Notes: generated by a model not told the origin, from the letters alone. A DNA stretch of 64,000 bases from IMGVR_UViG_3300023184_000025:62001-126000; one strand, 5' to 3'; counted from the first letter of the stretch, positions 11,258-30,206 are shown. Program-made: numbers and translations.

Positions 11258-11309
11258 CTCCTTTAATTAAGCGAGTTTACGATTTAGGACCCGGCCTATC
11301 CAGCGTCCT
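11258..11309 (-). promoter_or_regulatory. ROSE-like RNA thermometer leader
   Basis: CUC-G-CUU pairs with SD AAGGAG with a bulged G; upstream hairpin. Confidence 0.55.
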
Positions 11310-11317
11310 TAGTCTAT

Positions 11318-11348
11318 ATTATATATGATAAATTGTTGCGTTGCAACA
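11318..11348 (-). promoter_or_regulatory. Sigma70 promoter (TTGCAA-N17-TATAAT) with PhaR-like palindrome TGTTGC-N3-GCAACA over the -35
   Basis: Perfect palindrome at 11334-11348. Confidence 0.6.
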
Positions 11349-11460
11349 TTTTTACGTGTTATTTTGGTATGTTTGGATAAATTGATAGTGTTATATGGAA
11401 GTGTACTAATAAAATACCATTATCTTAAAGATCATAGTAAATAACACATAGGAGAATCAA

Positions 11461-11754
11461 ATGATTACATTTATTAAAAAACTTTTTGGGCTAGAAAAAC
11501 CCTCAGTTACAGAAGCACCGTATAAGGTAGAGACACCGACATCAGTTGTAACACCACTGACGGTGGGGTCTGAAGGAGTTGCACCAGCGGTTAAACCCAA
11601 AGCTGTTGTGGTTGAAAACACCGAAATTATACCCGTGAGCTTTTCTGACATACCAGTAATGGTTGCTACAACAAAAACACCTGCTAAAAGAGGACCCGCA
11701 AAACCAAAAGTTGCTAAAACGCCGCGAACACCTACAAAACCTGCGGCAAAATAA
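11461..11754 (+). CDS. Protein with N-terminal amphipathic helix and histone-H1-like Lys/Pro/Ala tail
   Basis: TAAATA 11438-11443, SD AGGAG. Confidence 0.7.
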   Translation: MITFIKKLFGLEKPSVTEAPYKVETPTSVVTPLTVGSEGVAPAVKPKAVVVENTEIIPVSFSDIPVMVATTKTPAKRGPAKPKVAKTPRTPTKPAAK

Positions 11755-11763
11755 ACAAGGTCA

Positions 11764-12471
11764 CTAAGTCTTTGCGCCGGAGAAATAATGTGCGGCGATC
11801 ACCGACTGTACAAGGCTGTCTAGGCTGTTAACAATGGGTATGCCATCCTCAATGGAAATGTTGATACTCAAGGGCAATTCGGTACAGCCTAGAACCACAG
11901 CTTGTGCGCCACGATCGATCAAGCTATGAATTACTTTCATTAGCAACAACTGAGATTCTGTAATCTTGCCGGCCTTGACCAGGTCAATAGCAGGTTGTAC
12001 AAAAAAGTCCATTTCAGCACGATCTGGAACTATACATCTCCAGCCTTGTTGCTCTAGTCTTTCTTGATATAAACCATATTCTATTGTGCCTTGTGTGCCC
12101 ATGATGCCAATGGTGGTATTGTCAAGCTGTAATTTACGGAGCTCGTCGGCTATGCTTTCTACTATGTGTAAGATGGGCACACCCATTTTGACCATGTCAT
12201 TGTACCAAAAATGTGCTGAGTTACAAGGAATAACAATACTGTCACACCCTAGTGTTTTTAATGCCTGTATACCTTGTAACATCAACAGTAATGGCCGATT
12301 GTCGCCGGCCTGTATACTTGTACTACGATCAGGAATTCTTGGCTCATTCCACAACACAAAAGGTATGTGTTCTTGATCGCAAGTGGCCGGCGACTGCCTG
12401 ATTAATCTAGTTACAAACTCTGCTGACGCTGCCGGTCCCATGCCTCCTAGTATGCCAAGTTTTTTTACCAT
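11764..12471 (-). CDS. Aspartate/glutamate racemase
   Basis: GILGGMGP, PCNSAH and GCTELP (both catalytic Cys present). Confidence 0.9.
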   Translation of the reverse strand: MVKKLGILGGMGPAASAEFVTRLIRQSPATCDQEHIPFVLWNEPRIPDRSTSIQAGDNRPLLLMLQGIQALKTLGCDSIVIPCNSAHFWYNDMVKMGVPILHIVESIADELRKLQLDNTTIGIMGTQGTIEYGLYQERLEQQGWRCIVPDRAEMDFFVQPAIDLVKAGKITESQLLLMKVIHSLIDRGAQAVVLGCTELPLSINISIEDGIPIVNSLDSLVQSVIAAHYFSGAKT

Positions 12472-12530
12472 ATTAAAATTAATACTATTAGTATGACTAT
12501 GATGCCAGCAATGACTCCTGGTAGTCTCAT
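12465..12530 (-). CDS. 21-aa single-TM peptide (not in the ORF track)
   Basis: MRLPGVIAGIIVILIVLILIW; overlaps both neighbours. Confidence 0.55.
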   Translation of the reverse strand: MRLPGVIAGIIVILIVLILIW

Positions 12531-13132
12531 TTTTTATCAAACAGTAAACTTGACGCAACAATTAGTACAGTCTGTGCTAACTCTACTTCTGTTGGTTGCT
12601 CTTTCCAACCTACACTTATTTGTCCTATAAACAATCCAGGGTCTGCTGGCACGCTTATGCGACACATGTATGTTACTCCATAGTTTTTATAAGTAAATCC
12701 AATATAACTTTGTGGTGTTAGATACGGACCGCATGGAATTTTGCCTGACATTAATCCAATTACATCTTCGTTGTTGCTGTGATTCTTAGTAAGCAACCCC
12801 ACATTGGTTCCATCATGGACTGTGTCATGTCCTGAGCCTCGTGTAGTTAGATATACTAATTTTCTGGTGTTCAGTAATGTGTTAACTTGGAATACAGCCA
12901 CAAGCTCTGCATCTGTATTCTTTAGTATAAAATTGACTGCTTGTTCATATTTGCCGTTCATCTTGGGCAAGGCCTGTTGAGCACGATAACTTGCCATGAA
13001 GTTATCTTTTTCAGTATAGGCTACCCATCCTAAAAAAGTGAATAGGCAAAGGAACACAACTGTAAATAGGCGAAATGGACTTTCGCCTATAAACTTTAAC
13101 AGTTCAAGCAGTAACTCTTTAAGTTTGTCCAC
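12527..13132 (-). CDS. T4 holin T-like protein (N-terminal TM plus periplasmic GAF-like domain)
   Basis: Size, topology and pattern similarity to T4 T, aligned by eye from memory. Confidence 0.5.
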   Translation of the reverse strand: MDKLKELLLELLKFIGESPFRLFTVVFLCLFTFLGWVAYTEKDNFMASYRAQQALPKMNGKYEQAVNFILKNTDAELVAVFQVNTLLNTRKLVYLTTRGSGHDTVHDGTNVGLLTKNHSNNEDVIGLMSGKIPCGPYLTPQSYIGFTYKNYGVTYMCRISVPADPGLFIGQISVGWKEQPTEVELAQTVLIVASSLLFDKK

Positions 13133-14396
13133 CGGCAGTTACCTCTTTGTCGCATACAAATGCTGTGACTGCTACGTTGCCGTGTACATGACTTGCTGTG
13201 CGAATCATATCCATTAATGGATCAACTGCTATCAACAATACCAATACAGCTTCGCTTGGTAGTTTTAACAAATCACAAACAACTGCTACAGTAGCAACTG
13301 TTAAGATACCTGTTGTACCTGCACTTGCTAATCCGGCTAAAATACTACCAAACAATACAACTGCTAAACCGGTAAGTCCTAGAGGAGCATCATAGATGTT
13401 GGCAATGAATACTGTAGCAATAGCATAGTAAACAATGCTACCAATACGGTTAACAGTGAAACTTAGTGGAACTGTTAGTTCAACTCCACCTTTGTCAAAA
13501 TGTAGTTTATGTAAGGCTTCTTGTGCGTATGGAATACAAGCCAATGAACTACGTGAACTAATAGCAACAATTAATGTTTCTTTAGTTTCACGGATAACAG
13601 TGGCAAGGCTTAATCCACTACGTGCCCAAATCACAGCAGTACCTGCGGCAACTACTAATAGTCCGCCAATGAACTGTTGGAACACAAAGTCAAACATTGT
13701 TAAGAAAATACCAACTCCAACTTTACCAACTTGACTGCTGATCATTGCCAACAATGCAAATGGTAGGAAGTAGTTTAAGAATTTGAAAATACTAATACTT
13801 GCTTGTTGAACACTCTTCAGTACTTCAACCAACATACGTTGTCCTTCTGTTTTCAAGTGACCCAGTGCAACTCCAAATATCAAACAGAAGATAACAATCT
13901 TCAAACTTTCACCATTGTTCAGTGTGGCAAAAATGTTTTCTGGGATAAACTTCTCTGCCATTTTACCAGCACTGACTGCGGGTGCCGTTGACATTGGTTC
14001 GTGAAGGGTAATGTTTAATTCAGTTCCGGTATCTTTGTTGTTGACTAGTACACCAAATTCTGTTTTCTTCTCAGGAGTCATTTCTGTACCTGTTACTAGT
14101 ACAGTTCCTACACCAATAACAGCAGCCAAGAACATACTGCCAACAAAGCCCACAATAATTTTGCGAATTAATTCCTGACTACCTTCTTTTTGTAATAGCC
14201 CAATGATACCAACTAGAATAGTTGCTAACAAAAATGGTAGTACAACTACCTTTAGCAAACTAATATAGATACTACCAATACTGTCAAGACCCATACTAAA
14301 CTCAGGTGCGTAAACGCCGCCTAAAATACCTGCGATAATTGATCCTAAAATAGTCCAAGGACTAGTCAGGAAACTTTTTAAATGTGTTGTTGTCAT
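13119..14396 (-). CDS. Dicarboxylate/amino acid:cation symporter (DAACS, GltP family)
   Basis: IPENIF, SSRSS hairpin-1 motif, DMIRT TM8 motif. Confidence 0.9.
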   Translation of the reverse strand: MTTTHLKSFLTSPWTILGSIIAGILGGVYAPEFSMGLDSIGSIYISLLKVVVLPFLLATILVGIIGLLQKEGSQELIRKIIVGFVGSMFLAAVIGVGTVLVTGTEMTPEKKTEFGVLVNNKDTGTELNITLHEPMSTAPAVSAGKMAEKFIPENIFATLNNGESLKIVIFCLIFGVALGHLKTEGQRMLVEVLKSVQQASISIFKFLNYFLPFALLAMISSQVGKVGVGIFLTMFDFVFQQFIGGLLVVAAGTAVIWARSGLSLATVIRETKETLIVAISSRSSLACIPYAQEALHKLHFDKGGVELTVPLSFTVNRIGSIVYYAIATVFIANIYDAPLGLTGLAVVLFGSILAGLASAGTTGILTVATVAVVCDLLKLPSEAVLVLLIAVDPLMDMIRTASHVHGNVAVTAFVCDKEVTAGGQT

Positions 14397-14405
14397 GCTA
14401 AATCC

Positions 14406-15239
14406 TTATTTCTTTTCAGCTTTGTAGCGATCCATTAACTTTTTAGTGTCAATGTTGTTGTATTCATTCTTAATAACGTAATTAACAATGCTTAACAATT
14501 GAATCGATTTGGGATTTACTGCTACTGCAATATAGTCCACGCTGTCACTAATTGCAATTGTTTTGGTACTAATTGCGGCATCTGGCTTTTCGAAGGCAAT
14601 TTTCTTAATTTCAAATTCGTCACGGTAAGCGGCAGCAATAGTGCCCTTGGTAACATTATCAATAATCACATCCCATTTTTCTTCAGGAATAAATGTTGCG
14701 TTAGGAAAGTTAATACGAGCAAATGTGTCGTAGCTGGAATTCTTGATAAAACTTATCTTGCCATTGAAGTCACGGATAACTTGATATGTTTCTTTACCTT
14801 GACTGTTTTGACTTAGCCATAGACGATTAACAATTAAACTTTGTCTTAGCTTAACATAAGGATCACTGAATCTAACTACTTGTAGTCGAGGACCAGTTAC
14901 TGACAGTTTACTAACTGCAATGTCTGCTTTGCCTTCTCTGATCTGTTCAACAACTTCAGCAAAGCTTTCTGCATCGCGTCTGAACTGCACAGGAACTCCA
15001 AGTAGGACACCAATTCGTCGAGCTATCTCGACGTCAAGACCATGAATGTTATCCCCTTCTCCGGAGAAGAAAGGAGGAACATCTTTTTTGGTCATTGACA
15101 CAACAAGAACATTAGCTTTCTTGATTGCGGCAATATCTGAAGGTAGTGGTACTGTTGAGTTAGCCAGCTGTGCTTGTCCCGTTGCCGGGGTAGTCCACAG
15201 GGTAACTAGTACGGATAGTAATAATAGTAGTTTTTTCAT
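14406..15239 (-). CDS. Periplasmic amino-acid-binding protein (SBP family 3)
   Basis: Signal peptide; PPF, GLDVEIA, GKADIA, FSDPY motifs. Confidence 0.9.
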   Translation of the reverse strand: MKKLLLLLSVLVTLWTTPATGQAQLANSTVPLPSDIAAIKKANVLVVSMTKKDVPPFFSGEGDNIHGLDVEIARRIGVLLGVPVQFRRDAESFAEVVEQIREGKADIAVSKLSVTGPRLQVVRFSDPYVKLRQSLIVNRLWLSQNSQGKETYQVIRDFNGKISFIKNSSYDTFARINFPNATFIPEEKWDVIIDNVTKGTIAAAYRDEFEIKKIAFEKPDAAISTKTIAISDSVDYIAVAVNPKSIQLLSIVNYVIKNEYNNIDTKKLMDRYKAEKK

Positions 15240-15244
15240 AATTA

Positions 15245-15252
15245 TATTTATA
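15245..15252 (-). promoter_or_regulatory. T4-like late promoter TATAAATA
   Basis: Exact T4 late consensus 5 nt before the ATG. Confidence 0.65.
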
Positions 15253-15319
15253 GTCAAATGTCCAGGACATACTTGCATTATGCCGAACAGTATCTAATAG
15301 AATTGTTGATTTAAAGAAT

Positions 15320-15346
15320 AAAAAAAGAGCCTTTTTTGGGGCTCTT
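15320..15346 (-). terminator. Intrinsic terminator
   Basis: AAGAGCC/GGCTCTT stem plus U run. Confidence 0.75.
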
Positions 15347-15427
15347 GGTACTGGTTACGCAAATCCAGCGACACGCTATCTTGTGCCCGGTTTTAAAGGG
15401 TTAAAAACTAACATTAAATGCTAGTCA

Positions 15428-16084
15428 TTACTTTCCTAATAATGTATCAACTTTAGCTTCAGCGGCGTCTAAACGTGCTTCAATAGCATCTAGTGCTGAA
15501 TTTGAAGGAATAGCAACTGCTTCAACAACTTGTTGAACTACTTCAGGAGCAACAGCTTCAACACCTGTTGCGGCAGCAATAACTTCGGCAACTGCTTCAG
15601 CAACTTGTTGTGCTACTTCGGCGGCCGGAGCTGGCATGTCAGCCACTGCTTGCATGATAGCTTCTGTGATTGCAATCGGGTCAACTACAACCTCTGGGTC
15701 GGCGGCGACGACTGCTTGAACTGCGGCTGAAATGATGTCAGCAACTTCTTCATGAGCAACTGCTTCTGATTCAACTTGTGCTGTAATAACGTCAGCAACA
15801 ATGTCAGCGGCTTCTGCGTGGTCAGCACTTGGAGAAAGTGCAACTACTTCTGCAACTGCGCTTTGAATGCTTTCAACTGCTTGTGCCGCTGCCGCAACAA
15901 TAGCGTCAACGTGTTCTTGAGTTTTTACAGCAATTAATTGCTCTACTTGAACTTCAACAACGGATAATCTTGCGTCTAGTTCTTCAATACTAGTAGCACC
16001 GTCTGTATTAACTGTTGTACCGGTTAAATTTGCTAATTTGGCTTCTACGGCTACTAATCTTGTAGCTAAATCATCTAATCTCAT
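15428..16084 (-). CDS. Acidic Ala/Val/Glu-rich helical protein with coiled-coil ends
   Basis: No F/W/Y/C; strong SD AAGGAG. Confidence 0.75.
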   Translation of the reverse strand: MRLDDLATRLVAVEAKLANLTGTTVNTDGATSIEELDARLSVVEVQVEQLIAVKTQEHVDAIVAAAAQAVESIQSAVAEVVALSPSADHAEAADIVADVITAQVESEAVAHEEVADIISAAVQAVVAADPEVVVDPIAITEAIMQAVADMPAPAAEVAQQVAEAVAEVIAAATGVEAVAPEVVQQVVEAVAIPSNSALDAIEARLDAAEAKVDTLLGK

Positions 16085-16148
16085 GGGTTTCTCCTTGTGG
16101 GGTTAGTTTGTGTGCCACCATGACACATAATTATTTAACAGATATTAT

Positions 16149-16166
16149 GTGACAGTGATGTTACAA
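16149..16166 (-). promoter_or_regulatory. Pho box TTGTAAC-ATCA-CTGTCAC
   Basis: Two 7-mers at 11-bp period matching CTGTCAY. Confidence 0.6.
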
Positions 16167-16167
16167 A

Positions 16168-16890
16168 TCACGACCAATATTTAGATGAGTCCAAACTATC
16201 CCAATATTTTTTATTGTTGCGATTTGCAAAGTTCTTGACAAGATACTTGGCCATGCCCATGTATCCCATTTTCTTAAACCTGCGCGAATCTTGGCCAAAG
16301 TGGTGTCGAACAATTCGAAACTTTCTAGGGCTGTATTTCCTAGATAAAAAGTAATCTTCCGACGTTGAAAACTGTTCAGGAAATCCTCCAAACTCCTCAA
16401 AACGATCTCTGCGGGTCAGCATGAATGCTCCCACAGCAAATGGACTAATGTATTTCAACACATGATTGATTAGGTTAAATGCTGTGAACCCAATCTTGGC
16501 ACGTAGGTCCTTGTCATAGCATTTAATATTGAGTCCAATAAGATCTAAATTTTTACGCTCAATTAAATTAACTGCATCACGTATAACCGTAGGTTTAAAG
16601 AAGCGAACATCAGCATCAATAAACAAGATGTAAGGTGTAGTTACCAGTCGTGCTCCACAATTTTTAGCAAAGGAAACAGGCCCACCATCTATGATTTCTA
16701 CATTCAAATTGCCCTTTGTTGCTTGGATAACTTCACGGGTATTGTCAGTTGAGCAGTCTGCAATAATAATTCTAGTGCTACCTATCATTTGATTGCGCAG
16801 ATGTGTTAGAAGATAGGAAATATAGTTTTCCTCATTCTTACAAGGAATCACAATAGTAATTTTATCACTGAATTTTATTGTTTCTTGCAT
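16168..16890 (-). CDS. Glycosyltransferase family 2
   Basis: IVIPCKNEE, DCSTD, FIDAD, SED motifs. Confidence 0.9.
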   Translation of the reverse strand: MQETIKFSDKITIVIPCKNEENYISYLLTHLRNQMIGSTRIIIADCSTDNTREVIQATKGNLNVEIIDGGPVSFAKNCGARLVTTPYILFIDADVRFFKPTVIRDAVNLIERKNLDLIGLNIKCYDKDLRAKIGFTAFNLINHVLKYISPFAVGAFMLTRRDRFEEFGGFPEQFSTSEDYFLSRKYSPRKFRIVRHHFGQDSRRFKKMGYMGMAKYLVKNFANRNNKKYWDSLDSSKYWS

Positions 16891-17045
16891 TCTGCTACCA
16901 CCTTAAAATTGTCAAACTTCAGTTTGTACTTAATTGTATTTAATGTCTGCAGGCAAGAGTGTTGATCCAGGAAAGTCAATTCTATCCGTCCCGGAACGTC
17001 CTGAGGATTGTTTACGTGAACTGCCAGTATTATCAGTATCCACAC
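16875..17045 (-). CDS. Small protein (56 aa, not in the ORF track)
   Basis: GTG start with SD AAGGAG; MWILIILAVHVNNPQDVPGRIEL...ECKKQ. Confidence 0.55.
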   Translation of the reverse strand: MWILIILAVHVNNPQDVPGRIELTFLDQHSCLQTLNTIKYKLKFDNFKVVAECKKQ

Positions 17046-17793
17046 GGTCTTTCTCCTTGGTCCATGTAACTATTTCCCATGTACCATCGTGGTGTTCTAC
17101 CAGTGCTGTACAACTTTCAACCCAGTCGCCATCATTCATATACGCAACACCATCTATGGTTTTTATTTCAGCGTGATGTATGTGTCCACAGATCACACCG
17201 TCAAACCCACGCTTCTTGCAGTAAGCGGCAAGATTCTGTTCAAATTTGAATATAAAGTCTACGGCTTTTTTTACTTTGTGTTTAAGATACTTACTAAGAC
17301 TAAAGTACCCAAAACCCATGCGATGACGGATCCAATTGAATTTGCTATTAAGCGATAAAATAATGTCATATGCTTTGTCTCCTAAAAATGCTAGCCATGG
17401 TGCCAGTCTGGTAATGCCATCAAACAGGTCACCGTGTGTGACTAGATAGTGCTTGCCGTTGGCACCTATATGTTCGATTTGATTGTGTATTTCTACATGA
17501 CCAAAACTAAAACCATACGGTATCATGGGTCTTAGAAACTCATCGTGGTTGCCTGCTATATAAACAACACGGGTGCCACGCTTGGCATGACCCAGAACTC
17601 TTCGTACTACATTGGTGTGGCTTTGCTTCCAACGCCATTTGTTTTGTTGTATGCGCCAGGCATCAATGATATCCCCTACCAAATATAATGTGTCGCAGGA
17701 ATTGTGTTTGAGAAAGTTGTTTAACTTATCCGCTTGACAGTCTTTGGTACCAAGATGAACATCGCTGACAAAGATACTGCGGTATGTCTTCAT
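16930..17793 (-). CDS. PlcP/LpxH-like metallophosphoesterase
   Basis: SDVHLG, GDIID, GNHD, HGD, CGHIH, GDWVES motifs. Confidence 0.85.
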   Translation of the reverse strand: MKTYRSIFVSDVHLGTKDCQADKLNNFLKHNSCDTLYLVGDIIDAWRIQQNKWRWKQSHTNVVRRVLGHAKRGTRVVYIAGNHDEFLRPMIPYGFSFGHVEIHNQIEHIGANGKHYLVTHGDLFDGITRLAPWLAFLGDKAYDIILSLNSKFNWIRHRMGFGYFSLSKYLKHKVKKAVDFIFKFEQNLAAYCKKRGFDGVICGHIHHAEIKTIDGVAYMNDGDWVESCTALVEHHDGTWEIVTWTKEKDRVDTDNTGSSRKQSSGRSGTDRIDFPGSTLLPADIKYN

Positions 17794-17824
17794 CTATTAT
17801 TTAAGATAAAGACTAACAAAGATC

Positions 17825-17842
17825 ATTACAATTTTATTACAA
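17825..17842 (-). promoter_or_regulatory. Pho box-like TTGTAAT-AAAA-TTGTAAT
   Basis: 11-bp period direct repeat upstream of the plcP-like gene. Confidence 0.55.
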
Positions 17843-17844
17843 AA

Positions 17845-22401: not shown

Positions 22402-22956
22402 TTACACTAGTAATTTTAACACATTTGGCATTACATCGCAAGTGAGATTGGATAATTTTTTAAAGGATTTGTCAACAGAATTTGGATGATCAACCAAAAC
22501 CCATTGCGTATCTGGGCTAGCCATAATAATACTATGTATTAGGGCAAAATAATTGAAGTTTTTATGCTCTTGAAATCTGTCAGAGGTTTTTTCTTTTTCA
22601 GATAAATCAAATCCAGCTAATAATACAATATCCGAAATGTTGCTAACTAGGTGTAATGCCACAACATCTTCTGGGCAGTCTACTTCCTGTGTAAATGTAC
22701 CTTCGTAGAGTTTAACACCCATTGGTCTTCCTATAGATTGGTAATAGTCTTTAGGCACATAAAAATTACAAACAGCTTGAAATGCACGTTGAATTAATTC
22801 TTGTGCTTTTGTCATGTCGTGACATATAACATTGTCAGTGGAGCATCCACGCCAGGTCTTCCATGAACCCCAGGTTGGACCTATGCTTTTAATAGAATCA
22901 AGGTTAACTGTTGGATCAATTTGATAGCTGTCGGCAAATACCCAATTTATTTTCAT
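22402..22956 (-). CDS. Hypothetical protein, possible Maf/sialyltransferase-like fold
   Basis: ALHL...IVLLAGFD motif. Confidence 0.45.
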   Translation of the reverse strand: MKINWVFADSYQIDPTVNLDSIKSIGPTWGSWKTWRGCSTDNVICHDMTKAQELIQRAFQAVCNFYVPKDYYQSIGRPMGVKLYEGTFTQEVDCPEDVVALHLVSNISDIVLLAGFDLSEKEKTSDRFQEHKNFNYFALIHSIIMASPDTQWVLVDHPNSVDKSFKKLSNLTCDVMPNVLKLLV

Positions 22957-24230: not shown

Positions 24231-25140
24231 GTTCTCTCCATAAATCTAATGTCGTACAGTGAAAACCGCCGCCTAATGTTCTACTATGTCGTAATTCCAA
24301 CGGAACTACTGTAAAACCTCGTTGCTCTAGTATGCGTATCAACTCTGTTTGCTTTTGGTCAACAATCACTGTTGTTGGGTCAACCACTAACATATTTAAG
24401 GCAATCCACTTGCTAGCATACGGGTAATTATAGAAGTCTTGCTCAATAACTTCATCTATATAAATTTTATCCCATTTTTCAAAAATTTTAGGGCAATTTG
24501 ATGAATTAACCCTGCTACCATTCAACAATACAAGGCCTTCGCGCAATGCGGTAATTGTAGAGTCAATATGCACACCACTATAAAAATTACAAATTTCAAT
24601 CTCCACATCCGGGAACTGTTGTTGTAGCCAATCATATGCGGCACGATTGCCTGATGGTGACTCTAAAAATAGCATCTTATCGTTTAGACGCAGTAGATTG
24701 GCCGCATCCAAAATCATACCTTCATTCCTGGGCATGTGTAGATAATTTGGTGACAAGTCAACAATGTTGTGATAGCATTGTAATTCCATGTTTCGACATG
24801 GATACATCATGGCAGTATCTACAATGGTGTCTTTATAAACTAGCAATCTGTCACGTGGGCAATAGTTGTACATTCCATCATGTGTTTGAAAGTTAAGTGG
24901 TTCCGGACGCACAACTTCTACACCTAGGCTGATCAGGGTTGTTGCCAACTTATCCAGATCTTCATTGGCTTCGTCAATGATCCTTTGAGGCACAGGACCA
25001 CGTGGAACAGGAGTTTTTTTCCAGGAAGTTTTGTTACTTTCCAATTTAAACACAGGATCGTTCACAGGCCAGTTTGCATCTGTGGCAGATCCAACTACAC
25101 AAGTTTTAAGTTTATCCCATTCGTTTTGGCTATAAATCAT
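24223..25140 (-). CDS. Amidinotransferase, copy 3 (StrB1-like)
   Basis: NEWDKL, CPRD, HIDST, GGGFHCTT motifs. Confidence 0.85.
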   Translation of the reverse strand: MIYSQNEWDKLKTCVVGSATDANWPVNDPVFKLESNKTSWKKTPVPRGPVPQRIIDEANEDLDKLATTLISLGVEVVRPEPLNFQTHDGMYNYCPRDRLLVYKDTIVDTAMMYPCRNMELQCYHNIVDLSPNYLHMPRNEGMILDAANLLRLNDKMLFLESPSGNRAAYDWLQQQFPDVEIEICNFYSGVHIDSTITALREGLVLLNGSRVNSSNCPKIFEKWDKIYIDEVIEQDFYNYPYASKWIALNMLVVDPTTVIVDQKQTELIRILEQRGFTVVPLELRHSRTLGGGFHCTTLDLWREHA

Positions 25141-25655
25141 AGATGTCCAGTAATTTGAAGAGTGTACCTTGGTTCAAGTCCAATGTTAGCTGCCATATGT
25201 GGAGTATCGTATGACCATTCAACCACGGTGCCGGCTTGCCAATTAACAACAGGTTCTCCTAACACTTCAAGATAATGTCCTGACTTCCAGTCTTCTACCA
25301 GAACAATAGCTCGTCTTATTTTGTGCTCTTGACCTTTTAATTTAAAAATATCAACATACCTAACATAAAGATCACTATGGGCTGGCATCACTGTTCCAGT
25401 ATGCATTCTGTAATAAGCAGTACCAATATCTTTCCATCCCCGAGATTCAAACAAATTAATAAATTTTTGATTCCACGATGGTAATTGATGTCTCATGTCA
25501 CAAAGGTCACCAGTAATTTTGCTCTGATATCCTTGATTGATCCAATGGTTAACACTTATTGGATCGTTAAACGGTTCATTGATGTAGTCAAGATGTTTGT
25601 ATTCATTATCCCAGAATACATCAATGTTGTACTTACGACTGTCGTGTGTTGCCAT
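25137..25655 (-). CDS. 2OG-Fe(II) oxygenase-like protein
   Basis: HSD...H...RYTLQITG. Confidence 0.65.
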   Translation of the reverse strand: MATHDSRKYNIDVFWDNEYKHLDYINEPFNDPISVNHWINQGYQSKITGDLCDMRHQLPSWNQKFINLFESRGWKDIGTAYYRMHTGTVMPAHSDLYVRYVDIFKLKGQEHKIRRAIVLVEDWKSGHYLEVLGEPVVNWQAGTVVEWSYDTPHMAANIGLEPRYTLQITGHL

Positions 25656-26871
25656 AGTGGATAATTTTGTAACCTGTCATATCAACCATTTTGCGCCATG
25701 GATCTACAATGATACTGCCAGCTTCAATAGGAGTATAGAATGTATCGTCTCGTACATCTCCAGTGTATCCATAGGTAATTTGTCGATTGTGTGCCATTAA
25801 TAATACCACAGGGCCTTTGACAGATGCAATTACATCGTTGTTGTCATCTGCCAATGGATCTAAATATTTAACGGTGCGGCCTGCTTCTTTAATGTAGTGC
25901 CCAATTAAAGTGCTGTAGCTACCAATACAATAAGGAACATCAGGCTTGTATGCTTTGCCATGAATGATAATTGGTAAATTTTTCTTTTCAGCAATATCAA
26001 CAAGAAATAGTGCTAGATTTTTTGCTTGAACTTCTCGAGCATGCATGATTGTATCAAACAAGTCATATCCAATGTCATACTCTTCAGCCAGCCAGCGCAA
26101 GGCAATGTTGTCACGTGGGTGGCATGCTCCTGCATCGCCCATGCCAGCTGTCATGTACTTGGGTCCCATAATACGCATGTTTGACTGTGCCAGTGCGTCA
26201 GTGACAACGTCAACGTTGATGTTACCAATCTTTAGTGCAAAGTCTTGAATCATGTTGACCAGTCCTACCTTGGCACTGATGAATGTATTATAGAAGATTT
26301 TGATGGCTTCGCATTCGTCCCAGGTGCCAGTCACATAACGTGGATTGTTTTTCATCAATGGACGATAGATATCTATTAGATCTCGCATTTCGCTGGCATC
26401 GCCTGTTTCTGTACCAATCATGACCATTTCAGGATTGGCCATGTCCCATTTTACGCTTCCCATGGCAATCAAATAAGGGTTGTATAAAAACTGATGTTTG
26501 TTATCTAACAACGTGGCAAAATGTCTACGTGTAGTTCCTGGAAGTACTGTAGAAATCAACACTACTCGTTTTGGTGTGGTGGCAAATTTGTTTACTTTAA
26601 CCAGGGCATCCTTAACTGCGTCGTGTCCAAAATCTTTTGGCTCCATATGACTAGATGGTACACTTCCGTCATACCCTTCGGTATGCGGTGTTGGTACAGC
26701 AATGAAAATCCAGTCACTCTTGTTGACTACCTCTTCGATGTCACAAACTTTAACCGACTCGCTTTCTCGTGGGTAAATATCATAACCACGTACAGTATAT
26801 TTTTCAGCGAAGACTTCTGCGCAATCCAAACCTAGCTTACCTAGGCCAATAAACCCAATATTATTTGACAT
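25633..26871 (-). CDS. UDP-glucose/GDP-mannose dehydrogenase family protein
   Basis: GLGKLG, AVPTP, STVLPGT, GACHPRD, AYKP motifs. Confidence 0.9.
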   Translation of the reverse strand: MSNNIGFIGLGKLGLDCAEVFAEKYTVRGYDIYPRESESVKVCDIEEVVNKSDWIFIAVPTPHTEGYDGSVPSSHMEPKDFGHDAVKDALVKVNKFATTPKRVVLISTVLPGTTRRHFATLLDNKHQFLYNPYLIAMGSVKWDMANPEMVMIGTETGDASEMRDLIDIYRPLMKNNPRYVTGTWDECEAIKIFYNTFISAKVGLVNMIQDFALKIGNINVDVVTDALAQSNMRIMGPKYMTAGMGDAGACHPRDNIALRWLAEEYDIGYDLFDTIMHAREVQAKNLALFLVDIAEKKNLPIIIHGKAYKPDVPYCIGSYSTLIGHYIKEAGRTVKYLDPLADDNNDVIASVKGPVVLLMAHNRQITYGYTGDVRDDTFYTPIEAGSIIVDPWRKMVDMTGYKIIHYGNTRQS

Positions 26872-28174
26872 GTTAATTCCTATTGATAAAATGTATCACT
26901 ACCTCGAAAGTTGTGTTGATTGTGATGTATTAATTTATCACTTTTATCCACACGGTAGTAAAGAAATTGAAGACCTTTCACAGTTTTCTAGTAAAGATCG
27001 TTCTTGGTTTGAATGGAACACCAGTTTGCTTATGGTCATGCACGATCAGGAACCTTTGAATTTTGACTATTACGATGAGGATAATTTAACAAACAGTATG
27101 TTACCTTGGTTTGATAAACACGACAAGTTAACTGCAAAAACCATGGAATTGGTGCCCGAAACTAAAGATATTTTAAGTAGACAAAACTTAAACTTTGTCT
27201 GTTACGGTCGTTCAATCTATGATAAAACGCTAATTTGTCACAGTGAGCAAAGATCTGAAAATTTAAAAAAGTACCAAGAAAATAACATGGTAGGGGTTTA
27301 TTGGTGGAGTCATGCAATTATTTCTAGAGACTGGTATCGTTATGCCGAACTTGATCCGTTGTTGATTTATACAAACTCATTTAACAAAGACTTTAACATT
27401 TACAATCGAGCATGGTCTGGTTCTAGAGAATATCGTGTAAAATTTACAGACCTGCTTGTTGAAAACAATTTGATTAATAACTCAAACATTAAATTTTCTA
27501 CTACCTGTGATCAACAACATTATCAACAATATCTTTATAAAAATCCAAAATTTATACCTAACAATGATTTATCAATGTTGCCTGAACCAACAGCGTCATC
27601 GACTTATAGTGCAGATTATTCTGCGGACGACTACAAAGAATGTTGGTTTGATGTTGTGCTTGAAACACTATTTGATGATCAACGGTTGCATATCACAGAA
27701 AAAACCCTACGACCAATTGCCTGTGGCAAACCATTTATTTTGACAGCCACACACGGAAGCCTTGAGTATCTTCATAGTTATGGTTTTAAAACATTCGGGG
27801 ATTACATCAACGAAAGCTATGATTCGATCTCAGATCCGTATCAACGATTAGAAGCAATAATTCAGTTAATGACAAAAATATCAATGCTATCACCAAATGA
27901 AAAAGAAGAACTTAATAAAAAATTTCTTCCTATAATCAAATACAATCAGCAAAGATTCTTTAGTAAAGAATTTAGTGACCGGGTAATCAACGAATTTAAA
28001 ACAAATTATAAATTGGCCAGAGACATTGCTAATCAGCATTGCACTGGACAAGCTTGGAAATTTGTTAACAAACTTAACTGTACCAATCCTGAAATAAAAG
28101 AAAATCTGTTTAGCGAGAATCCCAAAAAATCCAAAGCTGATATTATTAAGTTTTTTAAACTAATTAAAAGCTAA
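26870..28174 (+). CDS. Putative glycosyltransferase-like protein
   Basis: VVLET...ITEKTLRPI...PFI...GFKTF motif; paralogous motif in 58783-59847. Confidence 0.55.
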   Translation: MLIPIDKMYHYLESCVDCDVLIYHFYPHGSKEIEDLSQFSSKDRSWFEWNTSLLMVMHDQEPLNFDYYDEDNLTNSMLPWFDKHDKLTAKTMELVPETKDILSRQNLNFVCYGRSIYDKTLICHSEQRSENLKKYQENNMVGVYWWSHAIISRDWYRYAELDPLLIYTNSFNKDFNIYNRAWSGSREYRVKFTDLLVENNLINNSNIKFSTTCDQQHYQQYLYKNPKFIPNNDLSMLPEPTASSTYSADYSADDYKECWFDVVLETLFDDQRLHITEKTLRPIACGKPFILTATHGSLEYLHSYGFKTFGDYINESYDSISDPYQRLEAIIQLMTKISMLSPNEKEELNKKFLPIIKYNQQRFFSKEFSDRVINEFKTNYKLARDIANQHCTGQAWKFVNKLNCTNPEIKENLFSENPKKSKADIIKFFKLIKS

Positions 28175-28529
28175 TCTTTTTTTCAATTACTCCGGCCCAA
28201 TGTTCTCCCGGATCTGCTTGTTTGTATTCTTTAATGCGTATAGCAACATCGTCATAAAAACTGTTGAGTTCACCTCGCCATTTGCCCATTAAATGCTCAA
28301 GTGCATCTTCGCAGTACTTCCAATTTTTAAGACGATAGTTTTTCATCATGTTATTGTGCAATTCTCTAAAACGATCCAGAGTCACAAACTCTTCAAGACC
28401 CACCTTTTCAACCAGGCAATATGCAGTTACTGGGGTAGCAGACCCTGAAAACAATAATGTATCTAATTCAAGTATTGTGTATTTTTGATCAATTTCTTTG
28501 ACGTTTTCTTCACCTAAAATTATGTTCAT
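28164..28529 (-). CDS. Hypothetical protein
   Basis: 121-aa ORF with SD AAGGA. Confidence 0.7.
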   Translation of the reverse strand: MNIILGEENVKEIDQKYTILELDTLLFSGSATPVTAYCLVEKVGLEEFVTLDRFRELHNNMMKNYRLKNWKYCEDALEHLMGKWRGELNSFYDDVAIRIKEYKQADPGEHWAGVIEKKISF

Positions 28530-28555
28530 GGTCTAAATCCTTTTAAATATGTATC

Positions 28556-29344
28556 ATGCAATTTTCATTTGATCTTATTTCAGACCTTCATTTAGAAACG
28601 TGGCCCGAGTTTAATTGGGAAGGCCAAGCCACCAGCCAATTCTGTATTGTTGCTGGGGATGTTTCAAAAAGTCACCAACTCCTTTCACAGTCCCTCAGTC
28701 ACCTTAGTGACTGTTACCAAGGTGTTTTTTATATCGACGGCAACGACGAGCATAAACAAAATCTCAATCAAATTGGGGGCAATTACAAAGAAATTCAAGG
28801 TATCCTTGATGAGTTTCCAAATGTCATTTATCTTCAAGACAACGCTGTGGTAGTCAATGGTGTAGCAATCATTGCAACCAATGGTTGGTGGACCTGGGAC
28901 TTTGATGCTGATCTTGATCCGGTCGAAAGCAAACAAGCATTTAGAGATAAGTTCAACTGTGAATCCTGGGTTCCTGAGGTTATTGAAAGTATTGCATTTA
29001 ATGATGTTGATTATCTGTCTTCGTCAGTTAAACGGCTACAAACTCATAGCGATGTTAAAAAAATTATTGTTGTCACACATACAGTACCGTCTAGAGATTT
29101 AATTAGTCACGACGTTGAACTAATAGGAACACATAGATACAATACCATGGGTAATAGTTTTATTCAACAAATACTACACGAAGATTCAGAAAATAAGATT
29201 AGTCATTGGTGCTTTGGGCATTATCATGGCAGCGTTGATCGAGTAATTGACGGAATACGATATGTTAACAACTGTAAAGGAAGAGGTGATACACAATGGA
29301 AGAAGTCAGTTTATCATCCTTTACGAATTGAAGTTGATTTTTAA
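28556..29344 (+). CDS. Calcineurin-like metallophosphoesterase
   Basis: SDLH, AGD, GNDEH, THTVP, FGHYH motifs. Confidence 0.85.
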   Translation: MQFSFDLISDLHLETWPEFNWEGQATSQFCIVAGDVSKSHQLLSQSLSHLSDCYQGVFYIDGNDEHKQNLNQIGGNYKEIQGILDEFPNVIYLQDNAVVVNGVAIIATNGWWTWDFDADLDPVESKQAFRDKFNCESWVPEVIESIAFNDVDYLSSSVKRLQTHSDVKKIIVVTHTVPSRDLISHDVELIGTHRYNTMGNSFIQQILHEDSENKISHWCFGHYHGSVDRVIDGIRYVNNCKGRGDTQWKKSVYHPLRIEVDF

Positions 29345-29643
29345 GCAATCTCGGGTTCTAATTTAATCTGCAGTGGGTACCCTTCGGTTCTGGCACTAAC
29401 AGTAATTTCAATTCCCTTTTGCTCGGCAATTTCATACGGCAAAACTGCAACACAGGCAGATCCTGCATCGTGAATATCTGTTGTAATTTTTTCAGCGGTA
29501 ACTGTGGTATATTCAAAATATTGAATTAAACTTCCAATTACAAATTCCATAGATGTTTGATTGTCGTTGATATAGATAACCTTAAACATTGGAGGCTCTG
29601 CCAATCTTACGTTTGGTTTAATTCTATTTTTGGTGTCGGCCAT
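29341..29643 (-). CDS. clpS: ClpS adaptor
   Basis: FKVIYINDNQTSMEFV, IHDAG, YEIAEQK, YPL motifs. Confidence 0.9.
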   Translation of the reverse strand: MADTKNRIKPNVRLAEPPMFKVIYINDNQTSMEFVIGSLIQYFEYTTVTAEKITTDIHDAGSACVAVLPYEIAEQKGIEITVSARTEGYPLQIKLEPEIA

Positions 29644-29664
29644 TGTTATTATCTTCCTTTGCGG

Positions 29665-29695
29665 ATACTTGTAGGGCACCGTGCCCTACAAGTAT
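29665..29695. repeat. Perfect 15-bp inverted repeat
   Basis: ATACTTGTAGGGCAC-C-GTGCCCTACAAGTAT. Confidence 0.85.
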
Positions 29696-29713
29696 TTAAC
29701 ATTAACTATTATA

Positions 29714-30148
29714 TTATGAAGCGTAGTTAATTGCAATAGTTTTTGGCTTGGCTGAGTCAGGAATTACACGCTCTAGCTTGACAGATAAGATTCCGTCTTT
29801 GGCCACAGCATCCTTAACTTCAACATGATCACCTAGACTAAATGTGCGAATAAACTTGCGAGCACTAATGCCCTGATGACGGAAAATATATCCTTCGGGC
29901 GTTGTTTCTGTTTTTTCGCCGGTGATAATAATTTCACCGTCTTTAACAGTGATTTCAAGATCGCCTTGATTAAATCCGGCCACGGCAACCTGTACTTCGT
30001 AGGTGTTTTCACCTGTTTCTACAATGTTATATGGAGGATAATTAGTTGCGGCGTGATCGATCTGATTAACAATACGATCAAATAGTCTATCAACGCCAAT
30101 AGCGTTACGATAGAAGGGGGTGATATCAAAAGATGTGATTTTAGTCAT
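29714..30148 (-). CDS. Small heat-shock protein (Hsp20/IbpA-like)
   Basis: NYPPYNI, AVAGF, GISARKF, GIL motifs. Confidence 0.92.
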   Translation of the reverse strand: MTKITSFDITPFYRNAIGVDRLFDRIVNQIDHAATNYPPYNIVETGENTYEVQVAVAGFNQGDLEITVKDGEIIITGEKTETTPEGYIFRHQGISARKFIRTFSLGDHVEVKDAVAKDGILSVKLERVIPDSAKPKTIAINYAS

Positions 30149-30155
30149 GTCATTT

Positions 30156-30206
30156 CTCCTTTATTAAGCAAGTTGACTATACATGTAGCCCGACCATCGG
30201 CGCTAC
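30156..30206 (-). promoter_or_regulatory. ROSE-like RNA thermometer leader
   Basis: CUU-G-CUU pairs with SD AAGGAG; upstream hairpin; precedes the sHsp gene. Confidence 0.7.

What the first reader, a model, noticed from the sequence alone, without database searches (positions are those of the whole stretch)
11258..30206. Two ROSE-like thermometers with the same two-hairpin design, one on a non-chaperone gene
The hsp20 leader (30156-30206) and phasin-like leader (11258-11309) share AACUYGCUUAAU(U)AAAGGAGAA, which can pair the SD with a bulged G (the ROSE hallmark UYGCU). Each is preceded by a hairpin of different sequence but the same geometry with a bulged G (GUAGC-G-CCGA/UCGG-GCUAC; AGGAC-G-CUGG/CCGG-GUCCU). 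This suggests shared thermal or protein-mediated translational control; phasins have reported chaperone-like roles.
Basis: partly seen in the sequence, partly recalled or inferred. Interest (0 to 1): 0.65.

Follow-up and report, generated by a model that had tools for sequence, protein, structure and literature searches.

The report
ROSE-like RNA thermometers in a jumbo phage
A 345-kb uncultured jumbo phage puts the same short two-hairpin "ROSE-like" leader, known from bacterial small heat-shock genes, in front of three of its own genes (a small heat-shock protein, GroES-GroEL and a conserved 91-residue protein of unknown function), which suggests a phage-encoded stress regulon controlled at translation.

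Summary
Both leaders lie on the minus strand at the stated coordinates. They share AACUYGCUUAAU(U)AAAGGAGAA (2 matches, 0 expected), and each follows a 5' hairpin with one bulged G.

I found a third copy outside the window, upstream of groES-groEL. A covariance model built only from relatives' hsp20 leaders finds exactly these three sites in the 345-kb genome; the next hit has E about 0.8.

Rfam ROSE_3 (the short Pseudomonas ibpA thermometer) matches all three full-length but below its cut-off of 43 bits (27.7, 20.4, 32.5). One relative's hsp20 leader reaches 43.4.

Across 94 loci from related uncultured jumbo phages (65 unique leaders):
- Hairpin I covaries strongly.
- The bulged base is G in 62 of 62 leaders, in both hairpins.
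- The anti-SD motif YUYG(C/U) is present in 65 of 65.

The best reading is three ROSE-like translational thermometers behind sigma70-like promoters. Temperature response is inferred, not shown, and nearest-neighbour folding does not separate these leaders from 83 control leaders.

A live rival or added layer is repression by the phage IbpA-like protein binding the leader. The "phasin-like" label for the 91-aa protein has only weak support.

This is a new member of a known kind, in a new setting (phage, groES, a phage-specific gene).

The parts
11318..11346 (-). sigma70-like promoter of the 91-aa gene: -35 TTGCAA (11346-11341), 17-nt spacer, -10 TATAAT (11323-11318). The inferred transcription start is about 11311, 1-2 nt before hairpin I.
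   Evidence: 10 of 12 matches to consensus; sequence; position conserved in relatives
11334..11348 (.). Palindrome TGTTGC-AAC-GCAACA overlapping the -35; a probable protein operator. Its core TGCAACGCA fits the published PhaR consensus YGCRNYGCR.
   Evidence: unique in the genome, and present at the same position in 14 of 22 distinct relatives' promoters with a variable central triplet. Consensus taken from PMC12542648.
11286..11309 (-). Hairpin I of the 91-aa gene leader: AGGAC-G-CUGG / CCGG-GUCCU, bulged G at 11304.
   Evidence: always predicted; RNAalifold on a MAFFT alignment; 7 pairs with compensatory changes; bulge is G in 62 of 62
11258..11275 (-). Hairpin II of the 91-aa gene leader: anti-SD CUC-G-CUU paired with AAG-GAG (SD GGAG at 11261-11258), bulged G at 11272.
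   Evidence: (ROSE_3 alignment)
10976..11251 (-). 91-aa ORF (P0001), predicted all-helical, phage-specific family, function unknown.
10911..10949 (-). Terminator-like hairpin plus T-run just after the 91-aa ORF, which makes the gene look monocistronic.
30215..30243 (-). sigma70-like promoter of hsp20: -35 TTGACT (30243-30238), 17-nt spacer, -10 TATAAA (30220-30215). The inferred transcription start is about 30208.
   Evidence: read; TTGACA-N17-TATAAAT is conserved in relatives. The consensus scan did not list it because the last base of the -10 is A.
30184..30207 (-). Hairpin I of the hsp20 leader: UGUAGC-G-CCGA / UCGG-GCUACA, bulged G at 30201.
   Evidence: 96.7% of cells paired; 7 of 11 pairs with changes on both sides, on a MAFFT-only alignment
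30156..30172 (-). Hairpin II of the hsp20 leader: anti-SD CUU-G-CUU paired with AAG-GAG (SD GGAG at 30159-30156), bulged G at 30169.
30142..30179 (-). Possible third helix enclosing hairpin II: UAGUCA (30179-30174) pairs with UGACUA (30147-30142), which covers the last two bases of the start codon and the Thr codon.
   Evidence: (88.8% paired; compensatory changes in L036 UGGUCA/UGACCA and L035 UGUCAU/AUGACA)
29714..30148 (-). Phage small heat-shock protein, IbpA-like (P0002).
29341..29679 (-). ClpS adaptor homologue 34 nt downstream of hsp20. It may be co-transcribed, although a promoter-like site overlaps the end of hsp20.

Best explanation
The two leaders in the window, and a third one upstream of groES-groEL elsewhere in the same 345-kb jumbo phage genome, are short ROSE-like RNA thermometers of the two-hairpin type described for Pseudomonas ibpA. 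Each mRNA starts at a sigma70-like promoter, about 1-2 nt before a stable 5' hairpin (hairpin I) with an invariant bulged G. A short spacer leads to a weak hairpin II, in which the motif C-U-Y-[G]-C-U-U pairs with A-A-G-G-A-G, so the Shine-Dalgarno sequence is masked with one G bulged out. In the hsp20 leader an outer helix also ties up part of the start codon and the next codon. At low temperature hairpin II limits 30S binding. Warming melts it and raises translation of the phage small heat-shock protein, of GroES (and GroEL behind it) and of the 91-aa protein. Hairpin I does not melt; it probably helps folding and protects the 5' end. Shown: the sequence elements, their restriction to three genes, conservation and covariation, and reciprocal similarity to ROSE_3. 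Inferred: the transcription start, SD masking in vivo, and any response to temperature.
For: Rfam ROSE_3 (RF02523) aligns full-length (positions 1-69 of 69) to all three leaders with the AUG in register: 27.7 bits (E 3e-4), 20.4 bits (E 0.02) and 32.5 bits. A relative's hsp20 leader (L037) reaches 43.4 bits against the cut-off of 43, and seven other leaders of the 20 loci scanned (six hsp20, one 91-aa gene) score 29-37. In the reverse direction, the phage-derived model R2 finds a bacterial ibpA with a canonical ROSE_3-type leader (L153, 31.8 bits). Model R1, built only from relatives' hsp20 leaders, finds just three significant sites in the genome: 85, 36 and 32 bits, next best 14.8 bits at E 0.8. 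Two of the three genes are classic heat-shock genes: Hsp20/IbpA-like and GroES followed by a Cpn60 gene. The design is conserved in front of all three gene families in IMG/VR relatives. Hairpin I is 96-98% paired with many double-sided changes, on a CM alignment (116 cells changed on both sides against 35.5 in shuffles, 0 of 500 shuffles as high; slid controls 31-58% paired) and on MAFFT-only alignments. RNAalifold independently predicts both hairpins, each with a one-base bulge, for the 91-aa and groES groups. The bulged base is G in 62 of 62 leaders in both hairpins. The anti-SD is YUYG(C/U) in 65 of 65; the positions opposite G vary only between C and U, and the position opposite A is always U. 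In the groES group the outer part of hairpin II switches between UUUU/AAAA and CUUU/AAGG or AGAG. Predicted hairpin II stability is marginal and falls with temperature: median -6.1 to -0.5 kcal/mol from 15 to 45 C for the hsp20 group. Published work on P. putida and P. aeruginosa ibpA shows that this same design melts at hairpin II while hairpin I stays closed (PMC3669281).
Against: None of the three leaders in this genome reaches Rfam's gathering score. With the nearest-neighbour model, the probability that the SD is unpaired (0.31-0.35 at 37 C) lies within the spread of 83 control leaders with GGAG from the same genome (median 0.41). For the 91-aa leader it barely changes between 10 and 37 C. 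Hairpin II has almost no true compensatory change, because the SD cannot vary, so its pairing rests on conservation. The host and its temperature range are unknown. The promoters are sigma70-like, not sigma32-like, so nothing else marks these as heat-induced transcripts. The closest bacterial IbpA homologues (48% identity or less) have leaders that the phage model barely detects.
Confidence: 0.62

Rival explanations
1. The shared leader is mainly, or additionally, the binding site of the phage IbpA-like small heat-shock protein. Free sHSP oligomers bind the structured 5' UTRs of its own mRNA, the groES mRNA and the 91-aa mRNA and repress translation. When the sHSP is drawn onto aggregating proteins during infection or stress, all three are derepressed. 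This would be an aggregation sensor rather than, or layered on, a thermometer.
For: E. coli, Cedecea and Vibrio IbpA repress their own translation by binding the ibpA 5' UTR. E. coli IbpA also represses ibpB, and the stem-loops matter for this (PMC10474464; bioRxiv 10.1101/2020.04.20.050740). The residues required, R93 and an aromatic residue at position 34, are kept in the window's sHSP and three phage relatives, while IbpB has Q and F there (alignment A4). The C-terminal I-x-I motif is kept as well. An invariant bulged G followed by C in both hairpins, inside stems whose sequences otherwise drift, is the kind of feature a protein could read. One regulator encoded together with three targets that share a leader fits a regulon.
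Against: R93 is common in alpha- and gamma-proteobacterial IbpAs, so keeping it proves little. No RNA-binding determinant on the RNA side is defined in the literature, so nothing can be matched. The same features are fully explained by ROSE folding alone.
Confidence: 0.22
2. The leader is a constitutive expression cassette: a 5'-terminal stem-loop that protects the mRNA from 5'-end-dependent decay, plus a strong AGGAG ribosome-binding site in an A/U-rich context, with no regulatory switching.
For: Hairpin I sits at the inferred 5' end. 5' stem-loops are known to stabilise mRNAs (discussed in PMC3669281). Predicted SD masking is no stronger than in control leaders. The 91-aa protein family is very abundant in metagenomes (over 1,200 relatives), as expected for a highly expressed gene.
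Against: This does not explain why YUYG(C/U)UU lies in register with the SD in 65 of 65 leaders, why G is bulged in 62 of 62 in both hairpins, why only 3 sites in a 345-kb genome have the cassette, why two of the three genes are heat-shock genes, or why the element matches ROSE_3 in both directions.
Confidence: 0.08
3. Another trans-acting factor, such as a phage or host RNA-binding protein or a small RNA, recognises the repeated Y-G-C bulge motif and co-regulates the three mRNAs in step with the infection programme rather than with temperature.
For: The same local motif (bulged G 5' of a C-G pair) occurs twice per leader and never varies. The promoters are not stress-type. Jumbo phages have elaborate gene-expression timing (general knowledge).
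Against: No candidate factor was identified. There is no complementary small RNA site: the motif occurs only three times in the genome. ROSE homology offers a simpler account.
Confidence: 0.06

Closest known systems
Short ROSE-like RNA thermometers of Pseudomonas ibpA (Rfam ROSE_3, RF02523; Krajewski et al. 2013, PMC3669281)
   Same: Two hairpins. A G+C-rich 5' hairpin I with a one-base bulge and nearly the same core (GAUGCCG...CGGGUC in several phage relatives). A short hairpin II in which U(U/C)GCU masks the SD with a bulged G. Placement directly upstream of an IbpA-type gene, with AUGAC(U) at the start. Full-length alignment to the Rfam model, and mutual detection in both directions.
   Different: Encoded by a phage. 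Driven by sigma70-like rather than sigma32 promoters. Also used on groES-groEL and on a 91-aa phage gene. Hairpin II is A/U-richer and predicted weaker (-2 to -4.5 against -5.5 kcal/mol at 37 C) and lacks the flanking G-C clamp pairs of the Pseudomonas element. The hsp20 copies add an outer helix over the start codon. The window's copies score below the Rfam cut-off.
Classical ROSE elements of rhizobia (ROSE1 of Bradyrhizobium hspA; Nocker et al. 2001, Chowdhury et al. 2006, cited in PMC4166951)
   Same: A sigma70-type promoter followed by a thermometer, so control is purely translational. The last hairpin holds both the SD and, as in the phage hsp20 leader, the start codon. Bulged G opposite the SD.
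   Different: Classical ROSE has three to four hairpins and is 70-120 nt long; the phage leaders have two hairpins and are about 55-60 nt.
ROSE-like thermometers on genes other than sHSP genes (ABC transporter genes, PMC11342760; rhlA and lasI of P. aeruginosa, from my own knowledge)
   Same: A precedent that the U(U/C)GCU/SD hairpin is used outside small heat-shock genes, as here for the 91-aa gene and groES.
   Different: Those are bacterial genes, each with its own leader. They are not a set of leaders with matched two-hairpin geometry inside one phage genome.
Known phage RNA thermometers: lambda cIII; the SPbeta blyA fourU; a fourU before a sigma70 gene in a gut Caudoviricetes (PMC11182007, PMC10586365)
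   Same: Temperature-sensitive 5' UTR structures encoded in phage genomes.
   Different: None is of the ROSE type, none controls chaperone genes, and each is a single gene. PMC11182007 counts only a handful of phage thermometers in total.
IbpA self-repression through its own 5' UTR (Miwa et al., bioRxiv 10.1101/2020.04.20.050740; PMC10474464; PMC10410725 for rpoH, title and abstract only)
   Same: An IbpA-type protein with the R93 and Y34 equivalents, encoded behind a ROSE-like leader, and several mRNAs sharing that type of leader.
   Different: Binding has not been tested for the phage protein. Targets in E. coli are ibpA, ibpB and rpoH, not groES or a phage gene.

Membership tests
ROSE-like RNA thermometer (ROSE family; Rfam ROSE_3 RF02523) | Conserved U(U/C)GCU motif that pairs imperfectly with the Shine-Dalgarno sequence in the 3'-proximal hairpin | tested here: met
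   CUUGCU and CUCGCU lie in register with G-GAG in the window's two leaders and in the groES leader. YUYG(C/U) is present in 65 of 65 unique relatives' leaders. RNAalifold predicts the pairing.
ROSE-like RNA thermometer (ROSE family; Rfam ROSE_3 RF02523) | Bulged G opposite the SD | tested here: met
   In the predicted structures the unpaired base of hairpin II is G in 62 of 62 aligned leaders. The ROSE_3 model places it at its own bulge position. This is a prediction, not a probed structure.
ROSE-like RNA thermometer (ROSE family; Rfam ROSE_3 RF02523) | Two to four hairpins, with one or more stable 5' hairpins preceding the SD hairpin | tested here: met
   Hairpin I is predicted in every leader, is 96-98% paired, and has compensatory changes in most of its pairs.
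ROSE-like RNA thermometer (ROSE family; Rfam ROSE_3 RF02523) | Score at or above Rfam's gathering threshold (43 bits) | tested here: not met
   27.7 bits (hsp20), 20.4 bits (91-aa gene) and 32.5 bits (groES); nothing at the gathering threshold in the window. One relative (L037) reaches 43.4 bits. The window's copies are therefore ROSE-like by features, not Rfam-certified members.
ROSE-like RNA thermometer (ROSE family; Rfam ROSE_3 RF02523) | Location in the 5' UTR of a small heat-shock gene | tested here: met
   Met for the hsp20 leader (PF00011). The groES and 91-aa leaders depart from this; later literature accepts ROSE-like elements on other genes (PMC11342760).
ROSE-like RNA thermometer (ROSE family; Rfam ROSE_3 RF02523) | Temperature-dependent melting of the SD hairpin and temperature-dependent translation | not testable with these tools
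   Only nearest-neighbour predictions were possible. Hairpin II is marginally stable and weakens with temperature, but SD accessibility is not distinguishable from 83 control leaders.
IbpA-type small heat-shock protein (for P0002) | Alpha-crystallin domain, and the NCBIfam IbpA equivalog score | tested here: inconclusive
   PF00011 at 63 bits (cut-off 20.8) is met. NCBIfam IbpA NF008013 gives 126 bits against a cut-off of 212, which is not met. It is 42% identical to Salmonella IbpA and keeps the R93 and Y34 equivalents and the I-x-I tail. Call it IbpA-like, not an equivalog.
Phasin (Pfam Phasin_2 PF09361) (for P0001) | Significant match to the family profile or to known phasins | tested here: not met
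   P0001 has no Phasin_2 hit even at E 10, and the genome gives none. Relatives give 6 of 29 (best E 0.008) and 4 of 60 (best E 1e-4) weak hits. hhalign of the family profile against a Vibrio phasin and a Hephaestia (Sphingomonadales) phasin gives 0.1% and 1.9% probability. Foldseek finds no PDB match. Language-model neighbours (Phasin_2 0.88, PHB_acc 0.86, PHA_synth_III_E 0.84) are leads only.
PhaR operator (for the palindrome at the 91-aa gene promoter) | Palindrome CTGC-N3-GCAG / YGCRNYGCR at or next to the -35 of a phasin promoter, bound by PhaR | tested here: inconclusive
   The sequence fits: TGC-AAC-GCA lies within TGTTGC-N3-GCAACA and overlaps the -35. Fourteen of 22 distinct relatives' promoters have a match at -88 to -94 from the ATG, and L073 has GCTGC-ATT-GCAGC (consensus from PMC12542648). 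The short motif occurs 30 times in the genome. The phage has no PhaR-type gene. The host is unknown and binding is untestable here.

The most novel reading that the evidence does not exclude
A large clade of uncultured jumbo phages carries its own post-transcriptional proteostasis regulon. The phage IbpA-like protein acts as a sensor of aggregation or heat by binding a ROSE-like leader shared by its own mRNA, groES-groEL and a phage-specific 91-aa protein. That 91-aa protein would then be a new stress-linked factor, possibly a phasin-like granule or aggregate coat protein whose transcription is also gated by the host PHB regulator PhaR through the palindrome at its -35. The phage would thereby read temperature, protein damage and host carbon-storage state without using host sigma32.
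Probability: 0.15. Interest if true: 0.8.

Novelty: new member of a known kind. Interest (0 to 1): 0.6.

Why it matters
ROSE elements are the best-known class of bacterial RNA thermometers, and a 2014 review described them as always associated with small heat-shock genes. Only a handful of RNA thermometers of any kind are known in phages (lambda cIII and two fourU elements), and none is of the ROSE type.

Here one element is used three times in a single phage genome and is conserved with covariation across many related 300-350-kb phages from metagenomes. This would mean that:
- Jumbo phages tune their own chaperones (sHSP, GroES/EL) directly to temperature or proteotoxic stress, independently of the host heat-shock sigma factor.
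- ROSE-type control extends to groES.
- A very abundant, uncharacterised 91-aa phage protein can be assigned to a stress-response set by shared regulation, which gives a starting point for finding its function.

The leaders are short (about 55-60 nt) and predicted to melt at lower temperatures than the Pseudomonas element. They may be useful as low-temperature parts for synthetic biology. The whole claim can be tested with simple reporter fusions.

Tried and rejected
- Rfam at gathering thresholds over the whole window gave nothing. Only the permissive scan showed ROSE_3.
- No cultured relative was found. Megablast of the hsp20 region and tblastn of P0001 against 50,697 phage records gave no match. 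The sHSP's best hits among cultured phages are 42% identical or less.
- Thermodynamic test of SD masking against 83 control leaders from the same genome showed no separation. This neither supports nor refutes a ROSE mechanism, which relies on non-canonical pairs that the energy model does not capture.
- Bacterial origin or host: the 40 closest bacterial IbpA loci (48% identity or less; mostly Gammaproteobacteria, plus Nitrosomonas and a few Alphaproteobacteria) have leaders that model R1 hardly detects (three hits at 12-13 bits), and 20 of them scanned with Rfam gave no ROSE hit at E 0.01. Model R2 found nothing in 151 genomes sampled from the order that contains a Nitrosomonas MAG (strict filters, so not evidence of absence) and 4 of 151 in the order that contains Cellvibrio. 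One of these four is a canonical ROSE_3-type ibpA leader. The host remains unknown.
I did not try another route.
- Function of P0001: Pfam, NCBIfam and PHROGs, an AlphaFold2 model (pLDDT 77, three helices), Foldseek against the PDB (no match at E 0.001 or better), a PDB profile search (only designed helical bundles) and hhalign against two phasins gave no assignment. JGI's name 'ATP phosphoribosyltransferase' for relatives probably stems from weak spurious HisG hits (10 of 29, best E 0.0055).
- Further members of the regulon: model R2 on five near-complete genomes found only hsp20 and 91-aa leaders in all five and groES in this genome. Two weak hits, before an rpoZ-like gene and a peroxiredoxin-like gene (17.8 and 21.3 bits), were not accepted.
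- A start-codon helix for the 91-aa leader (GUAAAC with GUUUAC) shows no covariation and is broken in the window's own copy (UUC codon), so I do not claim it.

Full report
**What the window is.** The window is bases 62001-126000 of a single 345,154-bp virus record: 40% G+C, CheckV completeness 99%, linear. It is a jumbo phage with no close cultured relative.

**Checking the observation.** Both genes of the finding lie on the minus strand.
- The 91-aa ORF is at window 10976-11251 and the sHSP gene at 29714-30148.
- The shared string AACUYGCUUAAU(U)AAAGGAGAA occurs at 11256-11277(-) and 30154-30174(-) and nowhere else in the window. Shuffles gave 0 matches.
- Read 5' to 3' on the minus strand, each gene has the same layout: a sigma70-like promoter (TTGCAA-N17-TATAAT at 11346-11318; TTGACT-N17-TATAAA at 30243-30215), then about 7 nt, then hairpin I, a 10-11-nt spacer, hairpin II ending in the SD, 6-7 nt, and the AUG.
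- Hairpin I is AGGAC-G-CUGG/CCGG-GUCCU (11309-11286) and UGUAGC-G-CCGA/UCGG-GCUACA (30207-30184).
- Hairpin II is CUC-G-CUU/AAG-GAG (11275-11258) and CUU-G-CUU/AAG-GAG (30172-30156).

**A third copy.**
- Searching the whole genome with Rfam ROSE_3 gave a hit at G000:C1:306036-306099(-), 32.5 bits. It has the same layout: UUCGUGAU-G-CCG[UUCG]CGG-GUCAUGAA, then AUCUU-G-CUU...AAG-GAGAA.
- It lies directly upstream of a GroES homologue (NCBIfam 135 bits). An ORF with a Cpn60 domain (PF00118, E 8.5e-54) follows.
- The relaxed pattern CTYGCT-N3-12-AGGAG occurs exactly three times in the 345 kb.
- A covariance model (R1) built only from the hsp20 leaders of other phages scores the three sites at 85.1, 36.3 and 31.8 bits. 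The next best site has 14.8 bits, E 0.8.

The element therefore marks three genes in this genome, and two of them are textbook heat-shock genes.

**Relation to ROSE.**
- At Rfam's gathering thresholds the window has no hit.
- With permissive thresholds, the only meaningful family is ROSE_3 (RF02523, the short Pseudomonas ibpA thermometer). It aligns over model positions 1-69 of 69 to both leaders, with the model's two bulges on the two bulged Gs and the model's AUG on the start codon: 27.7 bits (E 3e-4) and 20.4 bits (E 0.02) against a cut-off of 43.
- Of 20 relatives' loci scanned, L037's hsp20 leader reaches 43.4 bits. Seven other leaders (six before hsp20, one before the 91-aa gene) reach 29-37 bits.
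- In the reverse direction, the phage-derived model R2 picks out a bacterial ibpA gene whose leader is a canonical ROSE_3 sequence (L153, 31.8 bits).
- The published Pseudomonas elements have this architecture: a G+C-rich hairpin I that does not melt, and a short hairpin II with U(U/C)GCU on the SD that does (PMC3669281).

**Conservation and covariation.** IMG/VR holds 47 loci with relatives of the sHSP, 29 with relatives of the 91-aa protein and 18 with relatives of GroES. Many lie on contigs of 300-350 kb.
- Nearly all carry the same leader design, giving 65 unique leader sequences.
- Single-sequence folding predicts hairpin I with its bulge in essentially every one.
- On a MAFFT-only alignment of 32 hsp20 leaders, hairpin I is 96.7% paired, and 7 of its 11 pairs have changes on both sides. 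Sliding the partners drops pairing to 35-50%.
- RNAalifold on MAFFT alignments of the 91-aa group and the groES group independently returns both hairpins, each with a one-base bulge. Each group has 7 pairs showing compensatory change.
- On the CM alignment of 62 leaders from all three groups, 116 cells have changes on both sides against 35.5 in shuffles (0 of 500 shuffles as high). This alignment is fitted to the model, so it leans that way.
- The bulged base is G in 62 of 62 leaders in both hairpins.
- The anti-SD is CUUGC, CUCGC, UUCGC, UUCGU or UUUGU in 65 of 65. Positions opposite G are C or U, and the position opposite A is always U. This is the signature of pairing to GAG.
- In the groES group, the outer part of hairpin II switches between UUUU/AAAA and CUUU/AAGG or AGAG.

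**A possible third helix.**
- In the hsp20 group, UAGUCA upstream of the anti-SD can pair with UGACUA, which covers part of the start codon and the Thr codon.
- Two relatives show compensatory changes at the wobble position of that codon: L036 UGGUCA/UGACCA and L035 UGUCAU/AUGACA.
- In the window this is 30179-30174 with 30147-30142.
- A similar helix in the 91-aa leaders shows no covariation and is broken in the window's copy, so I do not claim it.

**Thermodynamics.**
- The nearest-neighbour model gives hairpin II marginal stability that falls with temperature. The median for the hsp20 group is -6.1, -4.2, -2.0 and -0.5 kcal/mol at 15, 25, 37 and 45 C. The groES group is stronger, and the bacterial ROSE_3-type hairpin is -5.5 at 37 C.
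- In full-leader ensembles, however, the SD is no more masked than in 83 control leaders with a GGAG SD from the same genome (0.31-0.35 against a median of 0.41 at 37 C). The 91-aa leader shows almost no temperature trend.
- This is a neutral result. ROSE function depends on non-canonical pairs outside the energy model, but it means the thermometer function is inferred from homology and gene association, not computed.

**How it most likely works.** Transcription from a sigma70-like promoter gives an mRNA that begins with hairpin I. At low temperature the anti-SD holds the SD in hairpin II, and in hsp20 part of the start codon is held in the outer helix. Warming opens hairpin II and translation rises. 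This gives the phage its own sHSP, GroES/GroEL and the 91-aa protein on demand, without relying on host sigma32. Confidence is about 0.6. The structure itself is close to certain; the switch is the inferred step.

**Rivals.**
- The strongest rival, which may equally be an added layer, is repression by the phage sHSP itself. IbpA of E. coli, Cedecea and Vibrio binds its own ROSE-type 5' UTR. This requires R93 and an aromatic residue at position 34 (PMC10474464; preprint). The window's sHSP and three phage relatives keep both residues, whereas IbpB does not. The invariant bulged-G motif in both hairpins could be a protein contact.
- A purely constitutive stabiliser-plus-RBS cassette does not explain the anti-SD, the restriction to three genes or the ROSE_3 match.
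- An unknown trans-acting factor cannot be excluded.

**The 91-aa protein.**
- It belongs to a large, well-conserved, apparently phage-only family: over 1,200 relatives at 64-99% identity, and 338 clusters at 50% identity with a profile search.
- It is predicted to be three helices (pLDDT 77). It has no PDB fold match and no family assignment.
- The 'phasin-like' idea has only weak leads: language-model neighbours are Phasin_2, PHB_acc and PHA_synth_III_E at 0.84-0.88, and scattered Phasin_2 hits occur in relatives. Profile comparison with two real phasins fails.
- One observation points the same way. The promoter carries the palindrome TGTTGC-N3-GCAACA over the -35 (window 11334-11348). It is unique in the genome and found at the same place in 14 of 22 distinct relatives' promoters. 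Its core fits the published PhaR operator (CTGCNNNGCAG; YGCRNYGCR), which sits at the -35 of phasin promoters (PMC12542648).
- The phage has no PhaR gene. This remains a lead, not a finding.

**Comparison with what is known, and novelty.**
[quoted passage not shown] Later work added ABC transporter genes (PMC11342760).
- Salmonella groES has a thermometer, but PMC4166951 does not describe it as a ROSE element.
- Phage thermometers reported so far are lambda cIII and two fourU elements (PMC11182007).
- My literature searches found no report of ROSE-like elements in phages or of a shared thermometer on several phage chaperone genes. The library is not complete.

I therefore file this as a new member of a known kind in a new setting. 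The window's copies meet the structural definition of ROSE-like elements but not Rfam's score cut-off, and the defining behaviour (temperature response) could not be tested.

**Limits.** The host is unknown. The groES leader lies outside the window and is given in genome and locus coordinates only (G000:C1:306033-306099, L001 1498-1564).

Noticed in passing
window 11334-11348 (both strands): The palindrome TGTTGC-AAC-GCAACA overlaps the -35 of the 91-aa gene promoter. It is unique in the 345-kb genome and is found at the same position in 14 of 22 distinct relatives' promoters, with a variable central triplet. Its core fits the PhaR operator consensus YGCRNYGCR / CTGC-N3-GCAG. The phage has no PhaR-type gene.
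   Followed up: partly
G000:C1:306033-306099 (-), which is L001 1498-1564; outside the window: A third ROSE-like leader lies upstream of a phage groES followed by a groEL (Cpn60) gene, inside the phage's tRNA-rich region.
   Followed up: yes
G000:C1:287900-288233 and 293608-307992; outside the window: The phage encodes a permuted (two-piece) tmRNA with tag ANDEQFALAA and 28 tRNA genes. In a relative (L092 380-762) Rfam calls the tmRNA the betaproteobacterial type, which hints at a betaproteobacterial host.
   Followed up: partly
window 29341-29679 (-) and 30268-30711 (-): A ClpS protease-adaptor homologue lies 34 nt downstream of hsp20, and a 4HBT-type thioesterase gene lies just upstream. The phage therefore groups proteostasis genes here.
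   Followed up: no
L149 1501-1561 (relative G003:C1:134854-134914): A weak match (17.8 bits) of the leader model, with a GUUGCUU...GGAG hairpin, lies before an RNA polymerase omega (RpoZ)-like 78-aa gene. Another weak match (21.3 bits, L148) lies before a peroxiredoxin-like gene in G004. Both are too weak to count as members.
   Followed up: partly
L053-L077, about 110-130 nt upstream of the 91-aa gene start: Many relatives carry a second inverted repeat, TAGTGA-N4-5-TCACTA, upstream of the promoter palindrome. I did not see a clear counterpart in the window's copy.
   Followed up: no
window 10911-10958 (-): The terminator-like hairpin after the 91-aa gene contains a near-consensus promoter (TTGACC-N17-TATAAT) inside its stem-loop, possibly for the next gene downstream.
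   Followed up: no
relatives of P0001: JGI annotates many members of the 91-aa family as 'ATP phosphoribosyltransferase'. This looks like a mis-annotation caused by weak HisG profile hits (10 of 29 members, best E 0.0055).
   Followed up: partly
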